Shown piece by piece: positions 385 through 15,300 of a stretch of DNA of 64,000 nt. Source of the stretch: Fimbriosthenelais zetlandica. Taxonomy: Eukaryota. Where the stretch lies: positions 31,372,001 through 31,436,000 of the forward strand of contig OZ365115.1 of NCBI GenBank assembly GCA_977030845.1, in the 5' to 3' direction. The translations under genes were made by a program, and so were the position numbers. Position 1 is the first letter of the stretch; every line of letters begins with the position of its first letter. The notes below the pieces were generated by a model. The model had not been told where the DNA came from. It made no database searches and was given only the letters and a program-made list of their open reading frames with translations.

Positions 385-584
385 GTACGAGTCATTTACC
401 ACTAAAATATCTAATATATCTTTCTGCAGCTATCTCCCTCCCTCTCTCCTCTCTTGCACACCCTGCTCTTTAATTCGCCCCTTTTTACAATTATCTCCCT
501 GCCTCCTCTCTTCCTCACCCCTGGAAATTTTCCCTTTCCCTCCCCCCCCCCCCCCCCGTAACTTCCACTCTAATTTTCCCCTTT

Positions 585-852
585 CTACAGCTATCTCCCT
601 CCCTCTATTCCTCTTTCCCACATCCTTCCTCTCTAATTTGCCCCTTTCTACAGCTATCTCCCTCCCTCGATTCCTCTTTCCCACACCCTTCATCTCTAAT
701 TTGCCCCTTTCTAGAGCTATCTCCCTCCCTCGATTCCTCTTTCCCACATCCTTCCTCTCTAATTTGCCCCTTTCTAGAGCTATCTCCCTCCCTCTATTCC
801 CCTTTCCCACATCCTTCCTCTCTAATTTGCCCATTTCTACAACTATCTCCCT
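585..852. repeat. 63-bp pyrimidine-rich minisatellite (~4.3 copies) in the last EMC1 intron
   Basis: Unit cta(c/g)agctatctccctccctc.attcctctttcccacatccttcctctctaatttgccccttt starts at 585, 648, 711, 774 and 837; a partial copy lies near 425-445. Confidence 0.95.
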
Positions 853-2300: not shown

Positions 2301-2824
2301 ATCGGTCAAATTTTGTCTTAAATGTTTTGTTTTGTTTTATGACTTGTCCCTGTTTTTTGAGTTGTCCAACGTTCTCGTTTTCGACTCATTGGATGGGCCC
2401 GCTATAGTGTAGAGAAGGAGGAGCACCGACTTCCGGTGTCACCAAAGCAACGTTCTTACCTCCAGTACCGGAGAGTTCGCATCCCCGATTGGGAGAATTG
2501 GCTAGTTCAATACTCAGCCTCCAGATACCCTAATAGACTGCCTAAATTTAGTAGAAACATACATTATTAATCTTTAAGGAATTTATGGACCCATTCCGAA
2601 GATATAGGCCTACAGCTCGGTCCCCAGTGTTCTCCATACCCATCCCAAACTTCCCAGCACCAATCAATAGGCCTACTACTGATTCGTTTATATGCATCAG
2701 ATTTGCCTTCCGATCAATGTTGAAAAAATATTGAGCCCCTCGCCCACTCCCCTCCCCTCGGCAACTCAAACGAAAAAAAAAGCCCAAATCAACATGGGCG
2801 ACCCATGGAGCAGAAAAGTGTTCT

Positions 2825-2894
2825 GCAAGACAGGGGAAGTGAACCCCGGTCTCTGACGTTGAAGGCTAGTGTCTTACCTCTAGACTACCTGGCT
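2825..2894 (-). ncRNA. tRNA-like cassette 1 (loop CTTCAAC), degenerate B-box
   Basis: AGCCAGG TA GTCT AGAGGTA AGAC A CTAGC CTTCAAC GTCAG AGAC CGGGG TTCACTT CCCCT GTCTTGC, then TTTT at 2817-2814. Confidence 0.6.
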
Positions 2895-2970
2895 CTCAGG
2901 TCAACTGACTACACACCTTCAAATTTAGCCTGAACAGCCCATGACAAGGAGGAATCACAATGTGTATAAT

Positions 2971-3869
2971 CAGGGCTGTATTTAGGGGGGGTTACAGGGG
3001 TTACGTAACCCCCCCTGCTGATCAAAAAAAAAAATTCAAGTGTGGGAATAAGTTAAATGACTAGAAGATATGTCATCTGCCTGGTTTGTGTGTATCGAAC
3101 GCATTTCAATATGGCCTAAAGTCTAAGTGAGTCCATACAAGTCCATAGGCTACAAGTCAAAGCAAGTGTCAAAAGTTTCCTGTATTTTATTATAACTTCT
3201 CTGGTCACCTCAATCAACGTTGTATATAGGCTGCAATAGGTGTTCATGCCCTGCCTCTGTTCATTGTCAAGCTGAGTAATAAAACATGCATTTGAATTTA
3301 GCCTACGAAAGGCTTGTCCATTAGCCTACAGATGTAGCCTAAATTTCCTATAGGGCTATCGGTAGGTTACCATGGTTATTGGTAGGCCCTTAGAAGGGTT
3401 AAAAAGGATCATCATGATTCATCGGCTAAAGCTGTAAAATTAGGCCTACCTGAATTATGCTTTAGGCCTTGTAGCCTATATATAGGCCTACACCAAGATA
3501 GGGCCTACTAGCTTATTAGGCTAGTAGCCTTAGGGCTATTACTTTAGGCCCATCTTTACCGTACAATAAATGTTTCAGGGTCGTAGGCCTAAACCGTAGG
3601 CTATCGGTAGGCCCTATACAGGCCCAGACTTTAAAAAAATCCCTACTGGGATTGTTCTTTGAGAGCCTTATTCTTTGTTCCAAAATGCATCAAAATGCAC
3701 CAAATACCACCTTAAATTCCAAAATTTTCCGGGGGGGCTTGCCCCCGGACCCCCCTAGTTTTGCGTCACGCCTACGGCGCTCGCTTGTGAGTGCCTTCGG
3801 CACTCACCTTGATAATCAGTAATTGCCTAAACTGTAACCCCCCCTGAAAAATTCCTGCATACAGCCCTG
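2971..3869. mobile_element. MITE / non-autonomous DNA transposon with 11-bp TIR CAGGGCTGTAT and 6-bp TSD TATAAT
   Basis: Left end cagggctgtat (2971), right end atacagccctg (3869), subterminal GGGGGGGTTAC at both ends. TSD tataat at 2965-2970 and 3870-3875. The empty site is visible in A4 (reverse complement aatcacaatgtttaaaattattttgcccc). Confidence 0.9.
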
Positions 3870-5076
3870 TATAATTATTTTGCCCCCGGGCCCCTCCCCG
3901 GCCCCCAACCTCCACTCCAATCCCCATGTCTACCCCCAGGACTACCATCAACTCCCTCCGAAAACACCAGCCCGATTTGAAACGGCTAACATGTCAAAAT
4001 CCCTTAGAATAGCCCACTCTGTACGTACTGCCCATAGGCTCCAATGTTAAAAATTATTTAGCCCCCCGGACCCCTCCCCGGCCCCCAATCTCCACCCCAA
4101 CCCACATGTCTACGCCCAGCAGCCACCCGAACCCGCTCCCAAAAATTCAGCCCGATTCTTAGCTTCTAACCTGTCTAAATCCCTTCGATTCATCAAAAGT
4201 GTCCCGCCCATAGGCGCAATGTTAAAAGTCACTCACGATTACAGGAATGTGTGCCACAGAGCCGGTTTGCCAGTCCACTCAAATCGGCTTTTCTCTACTT
4301 GATATGTATTATTTTCACTCGAAATGACGGTTCTATATGACTTATGATCTCTACTGATAAATATTAAAAGAGCAGAGACGTAAAACGAGGACAACACCGA
4401 TTTCTGCGATATTGACAAATCGGCCTTGCGTATACCGGCCTATAATTTGGCCTTTTAAAAACCTTAACAGCGCCCTCTCACTAAAAGTCGAAAAAGTTGA
4501 ATAACTTCGTAAATAATGGGTCTAAAATTACAATTCAAACAGATTATTCTTAGTTGGGAGACCCCTCAGATGTCTATGTGGTTTTAGTTCCAATAACATT
4601 GATTTAAAATTTCGGATTTTCGAAATGGACTGAATTTCTTCATTTAGCATTGGAGTCAATGGAAGGAGGCGGCCGAGCGCCAGTGGCGACCCGAGCAGCG
4701 GCAAAAAGGTGAACTACCTTATAAGATTGGGTATTATACTTGGGATTCGGGGTATGGGGAGTGGGTCAGAATGGTACAATATTAATGGGATTTAGGGATG
4801 GGGCGGGGACTAGGCTAAATGACATTGAGCAAAATTAAAATATAGGAGGCCTACTCCTGCCGCTATCACCCGATGGATTTTTGTTTTATCTTTTTATCTT
4901 CTCTCTCTACCTTCCTCTCTCTCTCACTCTGTCTCCCTTCCACATGCCCTCTCTCTCCAGATGTGGCGCCACGCCCTCTCTCTCCAGCATTGGCAAGATC
5001 ATATACATGTACGGAGGTCTATCTGGTGAGGCGAGGAGGCGAGGCTTTTCATTCAGGTTATGCTGGCTTGCGCATA

Positions 5077-6145
5077 GTAGTTCACGTTTTCGCCGCTAGG
5101 GCATCTCGGGTCTCCACAGGCGCTTGGCCGCCTCCTTCCATTGACTCCAATGCTAAATGAAGAAATTCAGTCCATTTCGAAAATCCGAAATTTTAAATCA
5201 ATGTTATTGGAACTAAAACCACATAGACATCTGAGGGGTCTCCCAACTAAGAATAATCCGTTTGAATTGTAATTTTAGACCCATTATTTACGAAGTTATT
5301 CAACTTTTTCGACTTTTAGTGAGAGGGCGCTGTTAAGGTTTTTAAAAGGCCAAATTATAGGCCGGTATACGCAAGGCCGATTAGTCAATATCGCAGAAAT
5401 CGGTGTTGTCCTCGTTTTACGTCTCTGCTATTTTAATATTTATCAGAAGAGATCATAAGTCATATAGAACCGTCATTTCGAGTGAAAATAATACATATCA
5501 AGTAGAGAAAGGGCCGATTGGAGTGGACTGACAAACCGGCTCTGTGGAACACATTCCTGTAATCGTGAGTGATTTTTAACATTGAGCCTATGGGCGGGAC
5601 ACTTTTGATGAATTCAAGGGATTTAGATGGGTTAAAAGCATAGGATCGGGCTGAATTTTTAGGAGGGTGTTGGGATGGGTGCTGGGAGTAGACATGGGGG
5701 TTGGGGTGGAGGTTGGGACCCGGGGAGGGGTCCGGGGGGCTAAATATGTTTTAACATTGGAGCCTATAGAGTGGGCTATTCCAAAGAATTTTAACAGGTT
5801 AGCCGTTTCAAATCGGGCTGGTAGTTTTGGAGGGAGTTGTGCGGATAGACATGGTGATTGGGCTGGAGGTTGGGGCCAGGGAGGGGTCCCGGGGGCAAAA
5901 TAATTACAAATATTGTGATTAAGCCTTGTTCTGGGTGGTTCAGGCTAAATGTGTGGGGATGTAGGTCAGTCAACTGTGAGCCTGGTGGTCTAGCGGTAAG
6001 ACTCTGGCCCGGAGCGCGACAGACCGGGGTTCAATTCCCCGTCTTGTAAAACACTTTTCCTGTTCCCTGGTTCGTTGGTTGGGGGTGGGTGCTGGATATT
6101 CTTTTTCAACATTGATCGAAAGGCAGATACGATGCATTTAAGCGA
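5077..6145 (-). repeat. Arm A2 (inverted copy)
   Basis: Starts gtagttcac (5077-5085); near-identical reverse complement of A1 4300-4717 across 5110-5500, and more diverged further out. Confidence 0.9.
5979..6048 (+). ncRNA. tRNA-like cassette 2 (loop CCGGAGC)
   Basis: AGCCTGG TG GTCT AGCGGTA AGAC T CTGGC CCGGAGC GCGAC AGAC CGGGG TTCAATT CCCCG TCTTGTA; A-box TGGTCTAGCGG, B-box GGTTCAATTCC, TTTT at 6055-6058. Confidence 0.65.
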
Positions 6146-6165
6146 GTGTAACCGACAGACCTGTG

Positions 6166-6235
6166 AGCCAGGTAGTCTAGAGGTAAGACACTGGACTTGC
6201 AACACGAGAGACGGGGGTTCGATCCCCTGTCTAGT
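6166..6235 (+). ncRNA. tRNA-like cassette 3 (loop CTTGCAAC), tandem extra copy beyond A2
   Basis: AGCCAGGTAGTCTAGAGGTAAGACACTGGACTTGCAACACGAGAGACGGGGGTTCGATCCCCTGTCTAGT; B-box GGTTCGATCC, TTTTT at 6242-6246. Confidence 0.65.
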
Positions 6236-6423
6236 AAATTCTTTTTCGCTGCTGGATCACTACATATATATACGGCTTGTTAGTGTTCATTTGGGAGGGG
6301 ATCTTTTAGATAGCTGAGGCAAACGGAGCTTGGTTCCCGCCTGGTCGTACAGCTGGCGCTGTGGTGCACGGTGAGGTCGCTGAAGAAGGCTCGCAGTCTT
6401 CCTGTAAATATGTATGCCTAGTC

Positions 6424-7249
6424 ATCCATGGAGCAGAAAAATGGTTGGATCGAGTGAGGATTGAACCCTCGTCACTCGCTTGGCGGGCCAGTGTCTTACC
6501 TCTAGACTACCTGGCCGACAGGTCACTACACTGGTAGCTACGATTTAACCTTTGTAGGTACTGCCCATAGGTTCCAATGTTAAAAATTGTTTAGCCCCCC
6601 GGACCCCTCCCCGGGCCCCAACCTCCACCCCAAGCTCGATGTCTACCCCCAGGACCCATCCCAACTCACTCCCAAAAATCCAGCCCAATCCTTTGCTTCT
6701 AACCTGTCTAAATCCCTAAGATTCATTAAAAGTGTCCCGCCCATAGGCTCAATGTTAAAAATCACTCACGATTACAGGAGTGTGTGCCACAGAGCCGGTT
6801 TGCCAGTTCACTCAAATCGGCTCTTTCTATACTAATATGTGTTATTTTCACTCGAAACCACGGCAATGTATGACTTATGGCCTCTACTGATAAATACCAA
6901 AACAGCAGAGACGTAAAACGAGGATAACACCGATTTCTGCGAAGTTGACAAATCGGCCGAGCGTATACCGCCCTATAATTTGGCCTTTTAAAAACCTTAA
7001 CAGCGCCCTCTCACTAAATGTCGAAAAAGTTGAATAACTTAGTAAATAATGGGTCTAAAAATACAAACTAAACGGATTATTCTTAGTTGGGAAGTATTCT
7101 AAACAGTGGCCAGGTTTTTGAAGTGAGAAAATTGATTTAAAATTTCGGATTTTGAAAATGAACTGAATTTCTTCAATTAGCATTGGAGTCAATGGAAGGA
7201 GGCGCCTGAGCGCCAGTGGCGACCCGAGAGCGGCGGAAACGTGAACTAC
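6424..7249 (+). repeat. Arm A3 (direct copy of A1 with only one C-rich sub-repeat)
   Basis: Begins atccatggagcagaaaa (cf. A1 acccatggagcagaaaa) and ends gtgaactac at 7241-7249. Confidence 0.9.
6447..6516 (-). ncRNA. tRNA-like cassette 4 (loop CCGCCAA)
   Basis: GGCCAGG TA GTCT AGAGGTA AGAC A CTGGC CCGCCAA GCGAG TGAC GAGGG TTCAATC CTCAC TCGATCC, followed by AACCA and TTTTT (6441-6437). Confidence 0.65.
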
Positions 7250-7363
7250 TATGCGCCAGCCAGCATAGACCGAGTATCTGTCCCGGTGAGGCTATGTCGC
7301 TGGGAGGACGAGGCTTGTCATACAGGCTACAGCCAGCATAGCCTTCAGTCCTCGATGAAAGTT

Positions 7364-7554
7364 AAGGAACGCCCAGCAATGGTATAGGCCTTGTGATATG
7401 TATGGGAAATAGTGAAGGAATGTGAATAAGGGTATAAAGGCCTTGTGATATGTATGGGAAATAGTGAAGGAACGCCTAGCAACGGTATAGGCCTGATGAT
7501 ATGTATGGGAAATAGTGAAGGAACGCCCAGGCCGGGTATAGGCCTTGTGATATA
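7364..7554. repeat. 51-52 bp tandem repeat (3.7 copies) in spacer 2
   Basis: Units start at 7364, 7415, 7467 and 7518. Constant part ggtataggccttgtgatatgtatgggaaatagtgaaggaa; variable 10-11 nt segment. Confidence 0.95.
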
Positions 7555-7556
7555 CA

Positions 7557-7659
7557 GCGGCGGAACGGTGAACTACAGTACTATGATCTAGCCAAAGCTC
7601 TCTACTCCTTTCTCGGTGGGTTGGGTAGATCATAGTACCATAGTTCACCGTTCTGCCGC
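7557..7659. repeat. 34-bp-stem hairpin made from two copies of the arm inner-end motif
   Basis: gcggcggaacggtgaactacagtactatgatcta (7557-7590) pairs with tagatcatagtaccatagttcaccgttctgccgc (7626-7659) with 3 differences; 35-nt loop. Confidence 0.9.
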
Positions 7660-8741
7660 CGCAAATCTCGGGTCGCCAAAGTCGCGCTGGATTGCTCCTT
7701 CCATAGAGACCAATGCTATAGACCTCAAATTCCCTCCATTTTCAAAAATCGAAATTTTAAATTAATTTCAGTTGCACACGAAACCGATAGATACCTGGAG
7801 GTGCTTCCAACTAAGAATAATCCGTTTGAATTGTAATTTTAGACCCATTATTTACTAAGTTATTCAACTTTTTCGACATTTAGTGAGAGGGCGCTGTTAA
7901 GGTTTTTAAAAGGCCAAATTATAGGCCGGTATACGCAAGGCCGATTTGTCAACTTCGCAGAAATCAGTGTTAACTTCGCTTTACGTCTCTGTTCTTTTGG
8001 TATTTATCAGTAGAGGTCATAAGACATATATATCCGTAGTTTCGAGTGAAAATAACGCATATTAAGTAGAGAAAGAGCCGATTTGAGTGGACTGACAAAC
8101 CGGCTCTGTGGCACACATTCCTGTAATCGTGAGTGACTTTTAACATTGCGCCTATGGGCGGGACACTTTTGATGAATCGAAGGGATTTAGACAGGTTAGA
8201 AGCATAGAATCGGGCTGAATTTTTGGGAGCGGGTTCGGGTGGTTGCTGGGCGTAGACATGTGGGTTGGGGTGGAGATTGGGGGCCGGGGAGGGGTCCGGG
8301 GGGCTAAATAATTTTTAACATTGGAGCCTATGGGCAGTACGTACAGAGTGGGCTATTCTAAGGGATTTTGACATGTTAGCCGTTTCAAATCGGGCTGGTG
8401 TTTTCGGAGAGAATTGATGGTAGTCCTGGGGGTAGACATGGGGATTGGAGTGGAGGTTGGGGGCCGGGGAGGGGTCCTGGGGCAAAATAATTTTAAACAT
8501 TGTGATTTAGCCTTTGCACACGAAGGTGTGCCTTGTCCTGGGCGGTTCAGGCTAAATTTGAAAGGATGTTGTGTTCGTACCAGAGAGCCAGCTAGTCTAG
8601 AGGTAAGACACTGGCTTGGAACGTCAGAGACCGGGGTTCGTTTCCCCGTCTTGCTGGTGGGCGCTAATTTTTTTTTATCCAACTTTTATCGGAGTGAAAA
8701 TACGATGCATTTAGACGGATAGGTAGTATGGATTGGTGCTG
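7641..8741 (-). repeat. Arm A4 (inverted copy)
   Basis: Starts tagttcacc (7641); 8100-8500 is an almost exact reverse complement of A1 3876-4270; homology ends at gattggtgctg (8741). Confidence 0.9.
8586..8655 (+). ncRNA. tRNA-like cassette 5 (loop TTGGAAC), best-folding copy
   Basis: AGCCAGC TA GTCT AGAGGTA AGAC A CTGGC TTGGAAC GTCAG AGAC CGGGG TTCGTTT CCCCG TCTTGCT; D, anticodon and T stems pair fully, acceptor stem 5/7; T9 at 8668-8676. Confidence 0.65.
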
Positions 8742-12359: not shown

Positions 12360-15300
12360 CTGAAAAGGAAAAAGAAAGAATTCTAAGTAATGAGGCAACA
12401 GAGCTATTTCTTTGAGAATCTTCCGCATTATTAATGGAAAATAGTTTCAAATTACACACAAATGATTGTTGAAAGAGAATATTAACCAAAACCAGAAGCA
12501 CCAACTTTATGTGAATATTTTCAAATAATAAGTAGTTTTTGTTCACAATTTTCTACAGACATTAGATGTTTTAATGATTGATATGTAGGTAACCCACCTC
12601 TAGTGTTGAACTCAATGACCCGCGTGCCCCGTATAGGGTCTATATCATTATCTAGTGACGTCTCATCGTCGGGGAGGATCCAGCGACTCGTCAAGTCATC
12701 CTCAGCGTCCTCTAGCACCTTCCTGGTAGGAGGCTTGGTGGCCAGGTACTTACTGTAGTGACTCAGCCCATACTGAGCTATCTGTATAGGGTAGAAGTAA
12801 CCCTGAGGTCCCCACTGAGTAGAGATGGGTACTCCTAGAAGACATGAGCAAAATCAGAGGGTTAATATGCAACTCAATGAGGGCTGAAGTGAGTACCTGA
12901 AGTTGTGTGCCTCGAGAAGTGCATCTTGGGCACGAGTGACACTCACATAAGGCAAATGCAAATGATGGCACACAAATCAAATTGGTTCGTTATTGGTATG
13001 ATCAAATTTCTGATCAGAAGTTTCCATTGTAAGCAATTTCAAGGCTTTGCAATTGTCAATTTCCAGCAATCCCTTGTCCCTTGCGACAATCACACATGGT
13101 GGAGAACCCATATAAATAACTGAGAACCCATACAAATAAATGCAACATTACTGAACGCTAGTGCAATCCGCATCAGCCTGTTCCATGCCAAAACTGCACA
13201 GATTTTGTAGAATAGTATGTGCTCATGCCATGGTAAAATAGACGTATTAGAAGGAGGATATTGATATTTAGATGGACGCTGGACTCACCTTCTATACCAC
13301 TGATACATTTCACTCGATCCCTCACTTCCACATTATAATGCTCAAATGACATGAAGATACCCTCTGGAGTGTAGCGCCCCTGGGGGTTGTACACCTGAGA
13401 GTAGCTATGTTTCCACTCAAACCGTTCATAGCCATCATACTCTGTAAACTTGCCATACACCTGCAATCAAAAACACTCCATTTTAACGAGATTCACATTA
13501 CATTTTTAATATTAAAACGACAGGTTGATAAATTTTGAACCTCTTCTTTGAAATGTTGTTGTAATCAGACTAATTACTATAAATGACGTTATATTAATAT
13601 TTTTCTCATTAATTTAGTTGTTATTTTGGAAATCGCAATGACACACATAATAACCTATCCATAAATGTTACATATTCTGAACCTGTAATAAACAACTCGG
13701 ACCAAATCTATTCCACAACGGAATAAATAATACAGCTGAAGAGATATTTTTGGCGCTCGGGAGCCACAGTATCGTTTCAGTGACAATGCAATCATGGTGG
13801 GCGAAAGCATTCATGGACAGACAGAGATTTGATTTGTACATGGCCAATGGTGGGGAAGCATTTCTAATTCATGCCCTATCTAGGATTACTACTATGTATA
13901 TATATGCACCTGGGGCAAATGGCTCATCTAATGCTTACATAGACCGCTTCTCATTTGTCACACAGACATACAGAGTAATGTGATATGGATGCTATATGGA
14001 TGCCTGCCAGCAAACCAACCTTACAACAGAAGGCGGAAGTGTCCGCACCTCATATTCTCACAATTGTTTTATGATGGACTTCCACTTAACGACCACTTAA
14101 TTCACTTATACGACCATATCATACCAAATGGTGGTCAGAACCATTTTCGTCTAGCGATTTCATTCTCTAGAGCTGCAAGCATTGAAATCCCAAACTGAAT
14201 TGGCCTATAATAGGTTCTACTACAAGTGCAGCAAGAAAATTTCAATGAAACATTGTAAGTATCATTGTATTTAACTAAATGTCAGTTCAATGGCGGATAA
14301 TAAATCAACTAAAATCAATTCCAGAAGCTAATTCGGTCAACGAGGGTTAAGTACCGAGCTGATAAGAACAGTTAAGCTAACTCCTATGTTCTAAAAGGTA
14401 CAGAGAGGCCTGTCGCCCCTGTCGGTTGAACTTTGGTCCAGACAATCCCAGCAGCACACCCCAGTCCTGAGATAAGACTTGTCTGTTAGAGATAAGCAGG
14501 CTCAAACCTCTCCCGTGCGACCACTGCTAACACTATGCCTGTCAATGTAGCGGGCAGGCCAGCATTAGACTGGGCGACAGCTGGCACTATTTTTTTACCG
14601 CCCCAAAACATCCAGTCAACTTCCCTTCCAGCTGCTCTGGCGTAATGATTTGAATCCACTGTGGATTGATTCTGAAAGGCAGTATTTTCCTACCGACAGG
14701 AAAGAGATTTGACATTTGATAAGAGCCTCAATTTTTCAGACATCCTTTCATACCCTCTTCTAATGGTGGTTGATTTCCCTGAAAGCATTGGTGGGCTCGT
14801 GGCATTCAGCATGCACAGAGGGAATCTCTAAACTGATCGGTAAAAAATCTTTCCTACAACGAATCAGCCCTTCAACCACAACTACAACATTTTTGCTACA
14901 ACTTTCAACATTTTTGCTATTTTGCAATTCAATGAAATATAAATAAAGGGAACCTTTCACTCTTGAAATCTTTCAGTTCTGTTACTACCTAAACTAGCAA
15001 CAACCGAAGGGAGAACGAACGTTCATATTCAAAACCATGAACCTTTGGATTTTATTTCATATCTGCCCTAAAAAGATTTCAAAATTGATTTACTACTCTT
15101 TGTGAGCGGGAACAGGGCTATAGCCATGGAGAACGGGATTTCATTCTCCATGGGTATGGAGAATGATGGCAATATCAGATATCAAATAAATCACCGTATA
15201 TATTGTAATATACTCACCTCAAAATACTTGTTAATGAAGGTGAATGGGACGTAGACCTCATTGCCCTCGCGTCTACAGGTGACGGTATATTCACCATTGA

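What the first reader, a model, noticed from the sequence alone, without database searches (positions are those of the whole stretch)
2655..8741. tRNA-tipped compound foldback array between two convergent genes: candidate undescribed element system
Seen: four related 0.8-1.2 kb non-coding arms in > < > < order. Each has a tRNA-like cassette near the outer tip pointing outward, C/G-rich ~179-bp sub-repeats, repeated CCATAGGCTCCAATG / CCATTGACTCCAATG motifs and a shared inner terminus GTGAACTAC. The three loops between arms are unrelated sequences. No transposase and no outer TSD. Known: foldback elements and MITEs have long TIRs, and SINEs have tRNA heads but continue into a body and tail. I do not know a family combining long TIRs, self-terminating tRNA-like genes and variable internal cargo. 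Inference: a non-autonomous DNA element family or a hairpin-mediated amplification system. A MITE in only one arm and arm-specific variants argue against an assembly foldback artefact.
Basis: partly seen in the sequence, partly recalled or inferred. Interest (0 to 1): 0.85.

Follow-up and report, generated by a model that had tools for sequence, protein, structure and literature searches.

The report
Foldback repeat cluster with tRNA-like mini-genes
A real 6-kb block of four inverted, non-coding 1-kb repeat arms, each carrying a decayed tRNA-like mini-gene, sits between two animal genes; it looks like a rearranged cluster of a foldback-type repeat, interesting mainly for the tRNA-like units at the arm ends.

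Summary
Window 2655-8741 holds four copies (A-, B+, C-, D+) of one non-coding unit of about 1.1-1.2 kb, arranged as two head-to-head pairs side by side.

Each unit contains:
- an inner AT-rich domain ending at GTGAACTAC;
- one or two ~180-bp G-rich sub-repeats;
- a degenerate tRNA-derived Pol III mini-gene (A box, B box, its own T-run) reading away from the body;
- a conserved tail.

A fifth, solo cassette lies at 6166-6233.

Arms are 84-93% identical. Two tracts are 97-100% identical (A=B inner part, A=D outer part), which indicates recent gene conversion. An 898-bp TIR element with a 7-bp duplication sits in arm A only, so an assembly artefact is very unlikely.

The block lies between convergent EMC1 and GLCE genes. 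It is absent from the syntenic interval of a related (annelid-like) species.

The arm layout matches foldback transposons such as Tetris. However, there is no target-site duplication and no transposase, and I could not retrieve any other copy. Dispersal in the genome rests only on unverified first-stage notes of the same architecture on other chromosomes, so the scan has seen this pattern before on other DNA.

Verdict: a foldback-type repeat cluster, a new variant of a known kind (about 0.5). The main rival is in-situ fold-back amplification.

The parts
2655..2970 (-). Arm A, outer flanking domain: tail (2655-2826), tRNA-like cassette 1 (2827-2894) and its upstream leader
   Evidence: Rfam tRNA, 35 bits. 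Homologous to the outer parts of B and D. The tip CAGCACCAATC at 2655 is mirrored at 8741.
2971..3868 (.). 898-bp TIR element (MITE-like) inserted in arm A only, with a 7-bp TSD GTATAAT at 2964-2970 and 3869-3875
   Evidence: TIRs at 2971-2997 and 3832-3869. TSD read from the sequence. B and D are uninterrupted at this site.
3870..4227 (-). Arm A sub-repeats: A2 (3870-4047) and A1 (4048-4227)
   Evidence: A1 is 98% identical to D1 and A2 is 97% identical to D2. This is part of the A=D conversion tract, which ends at the insertion site.
4228..4717 (-). Arm A inner domain, ending in GTGAACTAC (4709-4717)
   Evidence: 97.5-100% identical to arm B over 4290-4665.
4718..5076 (.). Middle segment 1 (loop between A and B), non-coding and unrelated to the other loops
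   Evidence: The A-loop-B single strand folds to -531 kcal/mol.
5077..6150 (+). Arm B: inner domain (5077-5571), sub-repeats B1 (5572-5753) and B2 (5754-5910), cassette 2 (5978-6046), tail
   Evidence: The cassette has an A box, a B box and a T4 run, but only the T-arm scores in Rfam.
6138..6271 (+). Solo tRNA-like module 3 (cassette at 6166-6233), forming a convergent inverted pair with module 4
   Evidence: nhmmer E 2e-34. Rfam 25 bits. 76% inverted match to 6408-6524.
6408..7249 (-). Arm C: module 4 (cassette at 6446-6516), one sub-repeat C1 (6580-6762), inner domain ending in GTGAACTAC (7241-7249). It lacks the second sub-repeat and the tail.
7250..7640 (.). Middle segment 3: the 18-nt extension shared with B, a 51-bp tandem repeat x3.8 (7360-7553), a second copy of the 20-nt arm end (7558-7577), a mini-arm (7549-7595) inverted against the start of D, and a 25-nt spacer
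   Evidence: (I21).
7641..8741 (+). Arm D: inner domain (7641-8137), sub-repeats D1 (8138-8317) and D2 (8318-8500), cassette 5 (8586-8656), T9 run, and tail ending in GGTGCTG
   Evidence: ARAGORN and Rfam, 49 bits..

Best explanation
The block is a rearranged, probably no longer mobile, cluster of a non-autonomous foldback-type repeat specific to this (annelid-like) lineage.

The unit is about 1.1-1.2 kb and non-coding. It has the domain order of a foldback-transposon arm:
- an outer flanking domain that includes a tRNA-derived RNA polymerase III mini-gene reading outward and ending at its own T-run;
- one or two ~180-bp G-rich sub-repeats;
- an AT-rich inner domain ending at GTGAACTAC;
- a variable non-coding middle.

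Two head-to-head pairs (A|B and C|D) lie side by side, giving a roughly mirror-symmetric tetramer.

After the arms formed (about 10-15% divergence ago), arm-to-arm gene conversion overwrote arm A twice: its inner part from B and its outer part from D. A TIR element then landed in arm A, or did so before the second conversion and stopped that tract.

Shown here: the anatomy, the divergence pattern, the conversion tracts, the Pol III promoter and terminator signatures, the absence from the syntenic interval of a relative, and the absence of coding capacity and of a TSD.

Inferred: that the unit belongs to a dispersed family, that it arrived by transposition, that the cassettes are transcribed, and that read-through transcripts of the arms would fold into long hairpins.
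For: - Long inverted arms with internal tandem sub-repeats and unrelated non-coding middles. This is the layout described for Tetris and other foldback elements (PMC4079207, PMC4168063).
- The same inner breakpoint GTGAACTAC is followed by three different sequences (A; B and C; D and the mini-arm). This fits a defined domain boundary better than random duplication breakpoints.
- A ~40-nt block is fully replaced between arm lineages, next to a ~100-nt core that is 96-98% identical. This suggests input from more than one family variant.
- The syntenic EMC1-GLCE interval of a related species has no cassette, no arm homology and no inverted repeat, so this is a lineage-specific gain.
- All five cassettes keep an A box, a B box 31-32 nt later, and a T4-T9 run 16-23 nt after the B box. 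Identity peaks on the box-bearing parts: 89% and 74%, against 46-56% elsewhere.
- Leads only: more than 15 first-stage notes of ~2-kb palindromes capped by outward tRNA-like Pol III units on other chromosomes of this genome.
Against: - No TSD of 5 bp or more at the array ends, although such a scan finds one by chance 67% of the time. There is no convincing TSD for either pair.
- No transposase or any long ORF.
- No second copy of an arm, a module or an outer tip in the other 58 kb of the window.
- No copy found in protein-based or metagenome searches.
- The outer tips and tail are the least conserved part of the arms (66-83%). This is the opposite of what is expected for functional transposon ends.
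- Homology of the loci in the earlier notes to these arms was not checked.
Confidence: 0.5

Rival explanations
1. In-situ fold-back amplification, with no transposition. A single local segment carrying one or two tRNA pseudogenes was copied in inverted orientation by hairpin or template-switch replication errors. This happened first head-to-head and then again, giving the < > < > tetramer. The palindrome centres were later broken and filled with unrelated DNA.
For: - No TSD and no transposase, and the arms are unique within the window.
- The arrangement is mirror-like. A and D both carry complete tails. B and C share the same inner junction (27 nt at 96%) and truncated outer ends.
- The mini-hairpin at 7549-7667 (47-nt arms, 25-nt spacer) looks like a fold-back junction (I21).
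- 11 of the window's 21 G-quadruplex motifs lie in the array. Together with five Pol III units, these are plausible replication-fork obstacles (inference from general knowledge).
- Distances among arms are star-like.
Against: - The loops are unrelated, although copies of one junction should share their loop.
- One breakpoint has three different continuations.
- Block replacement inside the arms.
- Many notes of the same architecture elsewhere in the genome (unverified).
Confidence: 0.27
2. A locus kept for a function. Either it is a cluster of Pol III small-RNA genes or TFIIIC-bound boundary elements between two convergent genes, or it is a hairpin-RNA locus that yields small interfering RNAs from read-through transcripts of the inverted arms.
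For: - Promoter boxes and terminators are kept in 5 of 5 cassettes while neighbouring bases diverge.
- A ~100-nt core is 96-98% identical in the independent arm pairs (B-C, B-D, C-D), against a 10-15% background divergence.
- Very large hairpin potential.
- Position between the 3' ends of convergent genes.
Against: - Absent from the syntenic interval of the related species.
- The cassettes are degenerate and do not fold better than shuffles.
- Patchy identity can also come from gene conversion.
- No expression data could be obtained.
Confidence: 0.1
3. An assembly artefact: a chimeric fold-back read or a mis-join created a false palindrome.
For: Palindromic structures are a known artefact of some long-read libraries (general knowledge). 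No reads could be laid on the region.
Against: - Arms differ by 2-16%, with indels and different sub-repeat numbers.
- One arm alone carries a TIR insertion with a TSD.
- The loops are unique sequence.
Confidence: 0.03

Closest known systems
Tetris and other foldback (FB-like) DNA transposons: Drosophila FB, sea-urchin TU, Galileo
   Same: - Kilobase inverted arms built as an outer flanking domain, tandem sub-repeats (about 220 bp in Tetris, about 180 bp here) and an inner domain.
- A variable non-coding middle.
- Many rearranged forms, and non-autonomous copies without ORFs (PMC4079207, PMC4168063).
   Different: - Intact Tetris copies have 8-10 bp TSDs and Galileo 7-8 bp. None is present here.
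- No tRNA-derived Pol III unit is described in their arms.
- Here two pairs lie side by side, and the tips are the least conserved part.
tRNA-derived SINEs
   Same: The cassette is a degenerate tRNA copy with an A box and a B box at tRNA spacing.
   Different: - A SINE continues from the head into a body and a 3' tail. Here a T-run ends the unit 16-23 nt after the B box, and the conserved ~900 bp lies upstream, not downstream.
- No TSD, and no further copies in 64 kb.
Large genomic palindromes homogenised by arm-to-arm gene conversion, and fold-back inversion amplicons
   Same: Inverted arms with short spacers. Sharp tracts of 97-100% identity on a background of 84-93%. One tract stops at a heterology, the insertion in arm A.
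   Different: Those are usually tens of kilobases to megabases and carry genes. This one is 6 kb, non-coding, built of modular sub-repeats, and reportedly recurs elsewhere in the genome.
Tandem or clustered tRNA genes and pseudogenes
   Same: Several tRNA-related Pol III units within 6 kb.
   Different: - No cassette has an intact cloverleaf. Scores are 15-49 bits, and ARAGORN calls one of the five.
- The anticodon region differs in all five.
- Not conserved at the syntenic locus.

Membership tests
Foldback-type DNA transposon | Long terminal inverted repeats (hundreds of bp to over 1 kb) | tested here: met
   Arms of 0.85-1.2 kb, 84-98% complementary.
Foldback-type DNA transposon | Arms are modular, with internal tandem sub-repeats | tested here: met
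   ~180-bp sub-repeats of two types, one or two copies per arm.
Foldback-type DNA transposon | Variable, non-coding middle domain | tested here: met
   The loops at 4718-5076 and 7250-7640 are unrelated and have no meaningful ORFs.
Foldback-type DNA transposon | Target-site duplication flanking the element | tested here: not met
   No direct repeat of 5 bp or more at the array ends. The only match is a 7-bp one for pair C|D, next to non-matching tips and within chance expectation.
Foldback-type DNA transposon | Multiple dispersed copies sharing the same termini | not testable with these tools
   None in the 64-kb window. The source genome cannot be searched. Only unverified first-stage notes exist.
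Foldback-type DNA transposon | An autonomous partner encoding a transposase with the same ends | not testable with these tools
   No transposase-like ORF in the window.
tRNA-derived SINE | tRNA-derived head with internal Pol III A and B boxes | tested here: met
   A box TRGYNNARNGG and B box 31-32 nt apart in 5 of 5 cassettes. Rfam tRNA hits of 25-49 bits.
tRNA-derived SINE | Head at the 5' end, followed by a body and a 3' tail within the same transcript | tested here: not met
   A T4-T9 run lies 16-23 nt after the B box. The conserved sequence is upstream of the cassette.
Functional tRNA gene cluster | Intact cloverleaf with a paired acceptor stem and normal scores | tested here: not met
   ARAGORN of 5. 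Scores are 15-49 bits with unpaired acceptor positions. The minimum-energy folds are not cloverleaves, with z from -1.4 to +0.6.
Functional tRNA gene cluster | Conservation at the orthologous locus | tested here: not met
   The syntenic interval in L001 and L002 has no tRNA and no module.
Assembly fold-back artefact | Arms essentially identical, with no arm-specific events | tested here: not met
   2-16% divergence, indels, and an arm-specific TIR insertion with a TSD.

The most novel reading that the evidence does not exclude
A previously undescribed class of palindromic mobile element whose two ends are outward-reading, self-terminating tRNA-derived Pol III mini-genes. It would multiply as alternating head-to-head and tail-to-tail concatemers, by a rolling-hairpin-like or snap-back copying mechanism. 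It would pick up unrelated DNA at a fixed inner breakpoint (GTGAACTAC). This would explain the < > < > order, the three different continuations at one breakpoint, and the recurrent '2-kb palindromes capped by tRNA-like units' noted across this genome.
Probability: 0.1. Interest if true: 0.8.

Novelty: new variant of a known kind. Interest (0 to 1): 0.42.

Why it matters
If the family is confirmed genome-wide, it would be a foldback-type repeat that carries Pol III mini-genes at its ends.

This raises testable ideas:
- The units may recruit TFIIIC and act as boundaries for the element or its neighbours.
- They may stall replication forks and promote palindrome formation.
- They may mark the element for a partner enzyme.

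The locus is also a compact natural example of arm-to-arm gene conversion, with one tract halted at a heterologous insertion.

If it is only a local amplification, it is an ordinary structural curiosity.

Tried and rejected
Routes that gave nothing:
- Sequencing runs. Two look-ups (an arm, and the GLCE exon) listed none. Read laying could therefore not be used, and structure, copy depth and expression remain unchecked.
- External copies through chance ORFs. The 102-aa ORF of arm D found nothing in the word-indexed search. The 82-aa ORF of arm C found nothing in the exhaustive HMMER search.
- Two metagenome pattern scans, one with the invariant body block and one with the cassette head, gave 0 matches.
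- The earlier-findings look-up by sequence was blank.

Ideas checked and dropped:
- A by-eye resemblance between the left part of loop 1 and the flank outside arm A was not supported by a sensitive local alignment.
- The 7-bp TAAATAT match for pair C|D was judged to be chance, because the adjoining tips do not match and the null rate is high.
- The outer tips are not reused by other small elements in the window.
- A recalled likeness of GTAGTTCAC to rolling-circle nick-site nonamers was dropped. It came from memory only, and the motif does not fit that consensus.
- A retro-element reading found no support: there is no A-rich or simple-repeat tail and no TSD at the outer ends.
- SINE, working tRNA cluster and assembly artefact were rejected on the tests listed under membership.
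Full report
**What is there**

Window 2655-8741 is a compound inverted repeat. Repeat finding, self-BLAST and a MAFFT alignment of the arms oriented along their tRNA-like cassettes define four copies of one unit:
- A: 2655-4717, minus strand, interrupted at 2971-3868
- B: 5077 to about 6150, plus strand
- C: 6408-7249, minus strand
- D: 7641-8741, plus strand

Read in the cassette direction, the unit has these parts in order:
- An AT-rich inner domain of about 500 bp follows.
- Then come one or two G-rich sub-repeats of about 180 bp. There are two types, 70-74% alike, and each type is 85-98% alike between arms.
- About 70 bp of linker and a 20-nt leader follow.
- Then comes a ~70-nt tRNA-like cassette, a T-run, and a conserved tail of 90-170 bp ending in GGTGCTG.

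A and B are head-to-head around a 359-bp loop. C and D are head-to-head around a 391-bp loop. B and C are tail-to-tail around a ~300-bp segment that holds a fifth, solo module (6138-6271). That module is inverted against the module of arm C.

The 15-mer family has 10 matches in the window, 8 of them in the array, against 0.55 expected. GTGAACTAC has 4 exact matches, all inside the array (three arm inner ends plus the mini-arm), against 0.26 expected. No arm, module or outer tip recurs in the other 58 kb of the window.

**The cassettes**

ARAGORN calls only one of the five. Rfam's tRNA model gives 49, 35, 31 and 25 bits, and for cassette 2 only a T-arm match. Acceptor stems are broken. The minimum-energy folds are not cloverleaves and are no more stable than shuffles. 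These are tRNA-derived sequences, not working tRNAs.

All five nevertheless keep an A box fitting TRGYNNARNGG, a B box 31-32 nt downstream, and a run of 4-9 T starting 16-23 nt after the B box.

Mean pairwise identity by segment:
- 5' half with the A box: 89%
- T-arm and B-box part: 74%
- anticodon part: 56%
- leader: 48%
- trailer: 46%

This is the profile expected if the Pol III promoter is what has been kept. With five related sequences, that remains an inference. Because each unit terminates itself and the conserved kilobase lies upstream, these are not SINE heads.

**History written in the arms**

Most arm pairs are 84-93% identical with star-like distances. Arm A is a mosaic. It matches B at 97.5-100% over 4290-4665, and it matches D at 97-99% over 3878-4287. 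The switch lies near 4290, and the A=D tract ends exactly at the insertion that only A carries. This is the signature of two recent gene-conversion events between inverted arms. The reciprocal B=C tract is not elevated.

The insertion (2971-3868) has terminal inverted repeats and an exact 7-bp duplication GTATAAT. B and D are uninterrupted at that site.

Divergence within the arms is uneven:
- A ~100-nt core is 96-98% identical in B-C, B-D and C-D.
- The inner ~180 nt is much more diverged. It includes a ~40-nt block with no recognisable similarity between the A/B, C and D versions.
- The outer tail is the least conserved part, at 66-83%.

Beyond the shared inner end, three different sequences follow. 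A has one. B and C share another (27 nt at 96%). D has a third, and that one is repeated as a 47-nt inverted mini-arm 25 nt away (I21). A 20-nt copy of the arm end recurs at 7558-7577. Together with 7229-7248 it brackets 309 bp that hold a 51-bp tandem repeat.

**Context**

The left neighbour ends with an EMC1 C-terminal exon on the plus strand. The right neighbour is a glucuronyl C5-epimerase exon on the minus strand, so the genes converge.

The epimerase's best named relative is from Capitella teleta, at 65%, so the genome is probably annelid. An unnamed orthologue at 89% identity led to two long contigs of a related species, L001 and L002. These keep the EMC1-GLCE synteny, with an intergenic interval of 7.8-8.1 kb against 10.2 kb here. 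That interval has no tRNA, no module, no arm homology by profile search, and no inverted repeat of 60 nt or longer.

The array is therefore a gain in the lineage of the window, not a conserved tRNA locus. Because exons are only 77-82% identical at the DNA level, a nucleotide-exact empty site cannot be drawn.

**What it most likely is**

The arm layout matches the published anatomy of foldback transposons. Tetris has a flanking domain, ~220-bp tandem repeats, an inner domain, a variable non-coding middle, many rearranged copies and no ORFs. Galileo shows long, variable arms extended by tandem repeats and by other insertions.

Three observations fit members of a repeat family better than one local segment copied by accident: the fixed inner boundary with three continuations, the block replacement within the arms, and the lineage-specific presence.

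First-stage notes on other chromosomes of this genome repeatedly describe ~2-kb palindromes capped by outward tRNA-like Pol III units. Some are in tandem arrays, and one note reports tandem cassettes with conserved boxes and variable cores 2.7 Mb away. These notes raised my odds for a dispersed family. They are unchecked, and their homology to these arms is unknown.

Against membership:
- A defining feature failed. No target-site duplication flanks the array or either pair.
- No transposase is present.
- The tips are the least conserved part.

I therefore describe it as foldback-type in architecture, with membership unproven. I give this reading a confidence of about 0.5.

**Rivals**

In-situ fold-back amplification (0.27) explains the missing TSD, the mirror-like order, the shared B/C junction and the mini-hairpin. 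The 11 G-quadruplex motifs in the array (of 21 in the window) and the five Pol III units are plausible fork obstacles. This reading does not easily explain unrelated loops at one breakpoint, or recurrence elsewhere in the genome.

A selected function (0.1), as a Pol III gene cluster, a boundary element or a hairpin-RNA source, is suggested by the kept boxes, the conserved core and a -531 kcal/mol hairpin. Against it stand the absence from the relative and the lack of any expression data.

An assembly artefact (0.03) is contradicted by the divergence between arms and by the arm-specific insertion.

**Limits**

No sequencing runs were listed. No external copy was found through ORFs or through pattern scans. 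Dfam and Repbase are not available here.

Seven searches of the held literature found no foldback or TIR element with tRNA-derived Pol III units. That is weak evidence of novelty, because most subscription papers are not in the held library.

Noticed in passing
window 2971-3868: An 898-bp TIR element starting CAGGGCTGTATTTAGGGGGGGTTACAG, with an exact 7-bp TSD GTATAAT. Its interior is rich in TAGGCCTA-type short palindromes. A 7-8 bp TSD would fit a P-like or hAT-like family. No second copy in the window.
   Followed up: partly
window 7229-7577: A 20-nt direct repeat of the arm end, GCGGCGGAA(A)CG(G)TGAACTAC, brackets 309 bp that contain a 51-bp tandem repeat x3.8 (7360-7553). It looks like an insertion or duplication at the palindrome centre.
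   Followed up: partly
window about 4427-4526, 5274-5373, 6960-7059 and 7838-7937: A ~100-nt core of the arms is 96-98% identical in the independent arm pairs (B-C, B-D, C-D), although the background divergence is 10-15%. It includes TTTTTAAAAGG and AAATTATAGG. The cause is unknown: constraint or a conversion hotspot.
   Followed up: no
window 430-834: A strongly C-rich plus strand (GC skew -0.45 in the first kb), with a tandemly repeated unit that reads as a repetitive 134-aa ORF on the minus strand (GKLERKDVGKRNRGREIALER...). This is probably an intronic minisatellite of the EMC1 gene.
   Followed up: no
L001 7171-7886 and L002 7958-8649: In the related species, a 64-nt piece homologous to window 12591-12654 (next to the epimerase exon) is repeated about six times at 94-bp spacing in L001 but fewer times in L002. 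This is a structural difference between what look like two haplotigs of one assembly.
   Followed up: no
window 2655-8741: 11 of the 21 canonical G-quadruplex motifs in the 64-kb window fall within this 6-kb block. They are almost all on the cassette-sense strand of the sub-repeats.
   Followed up: partly
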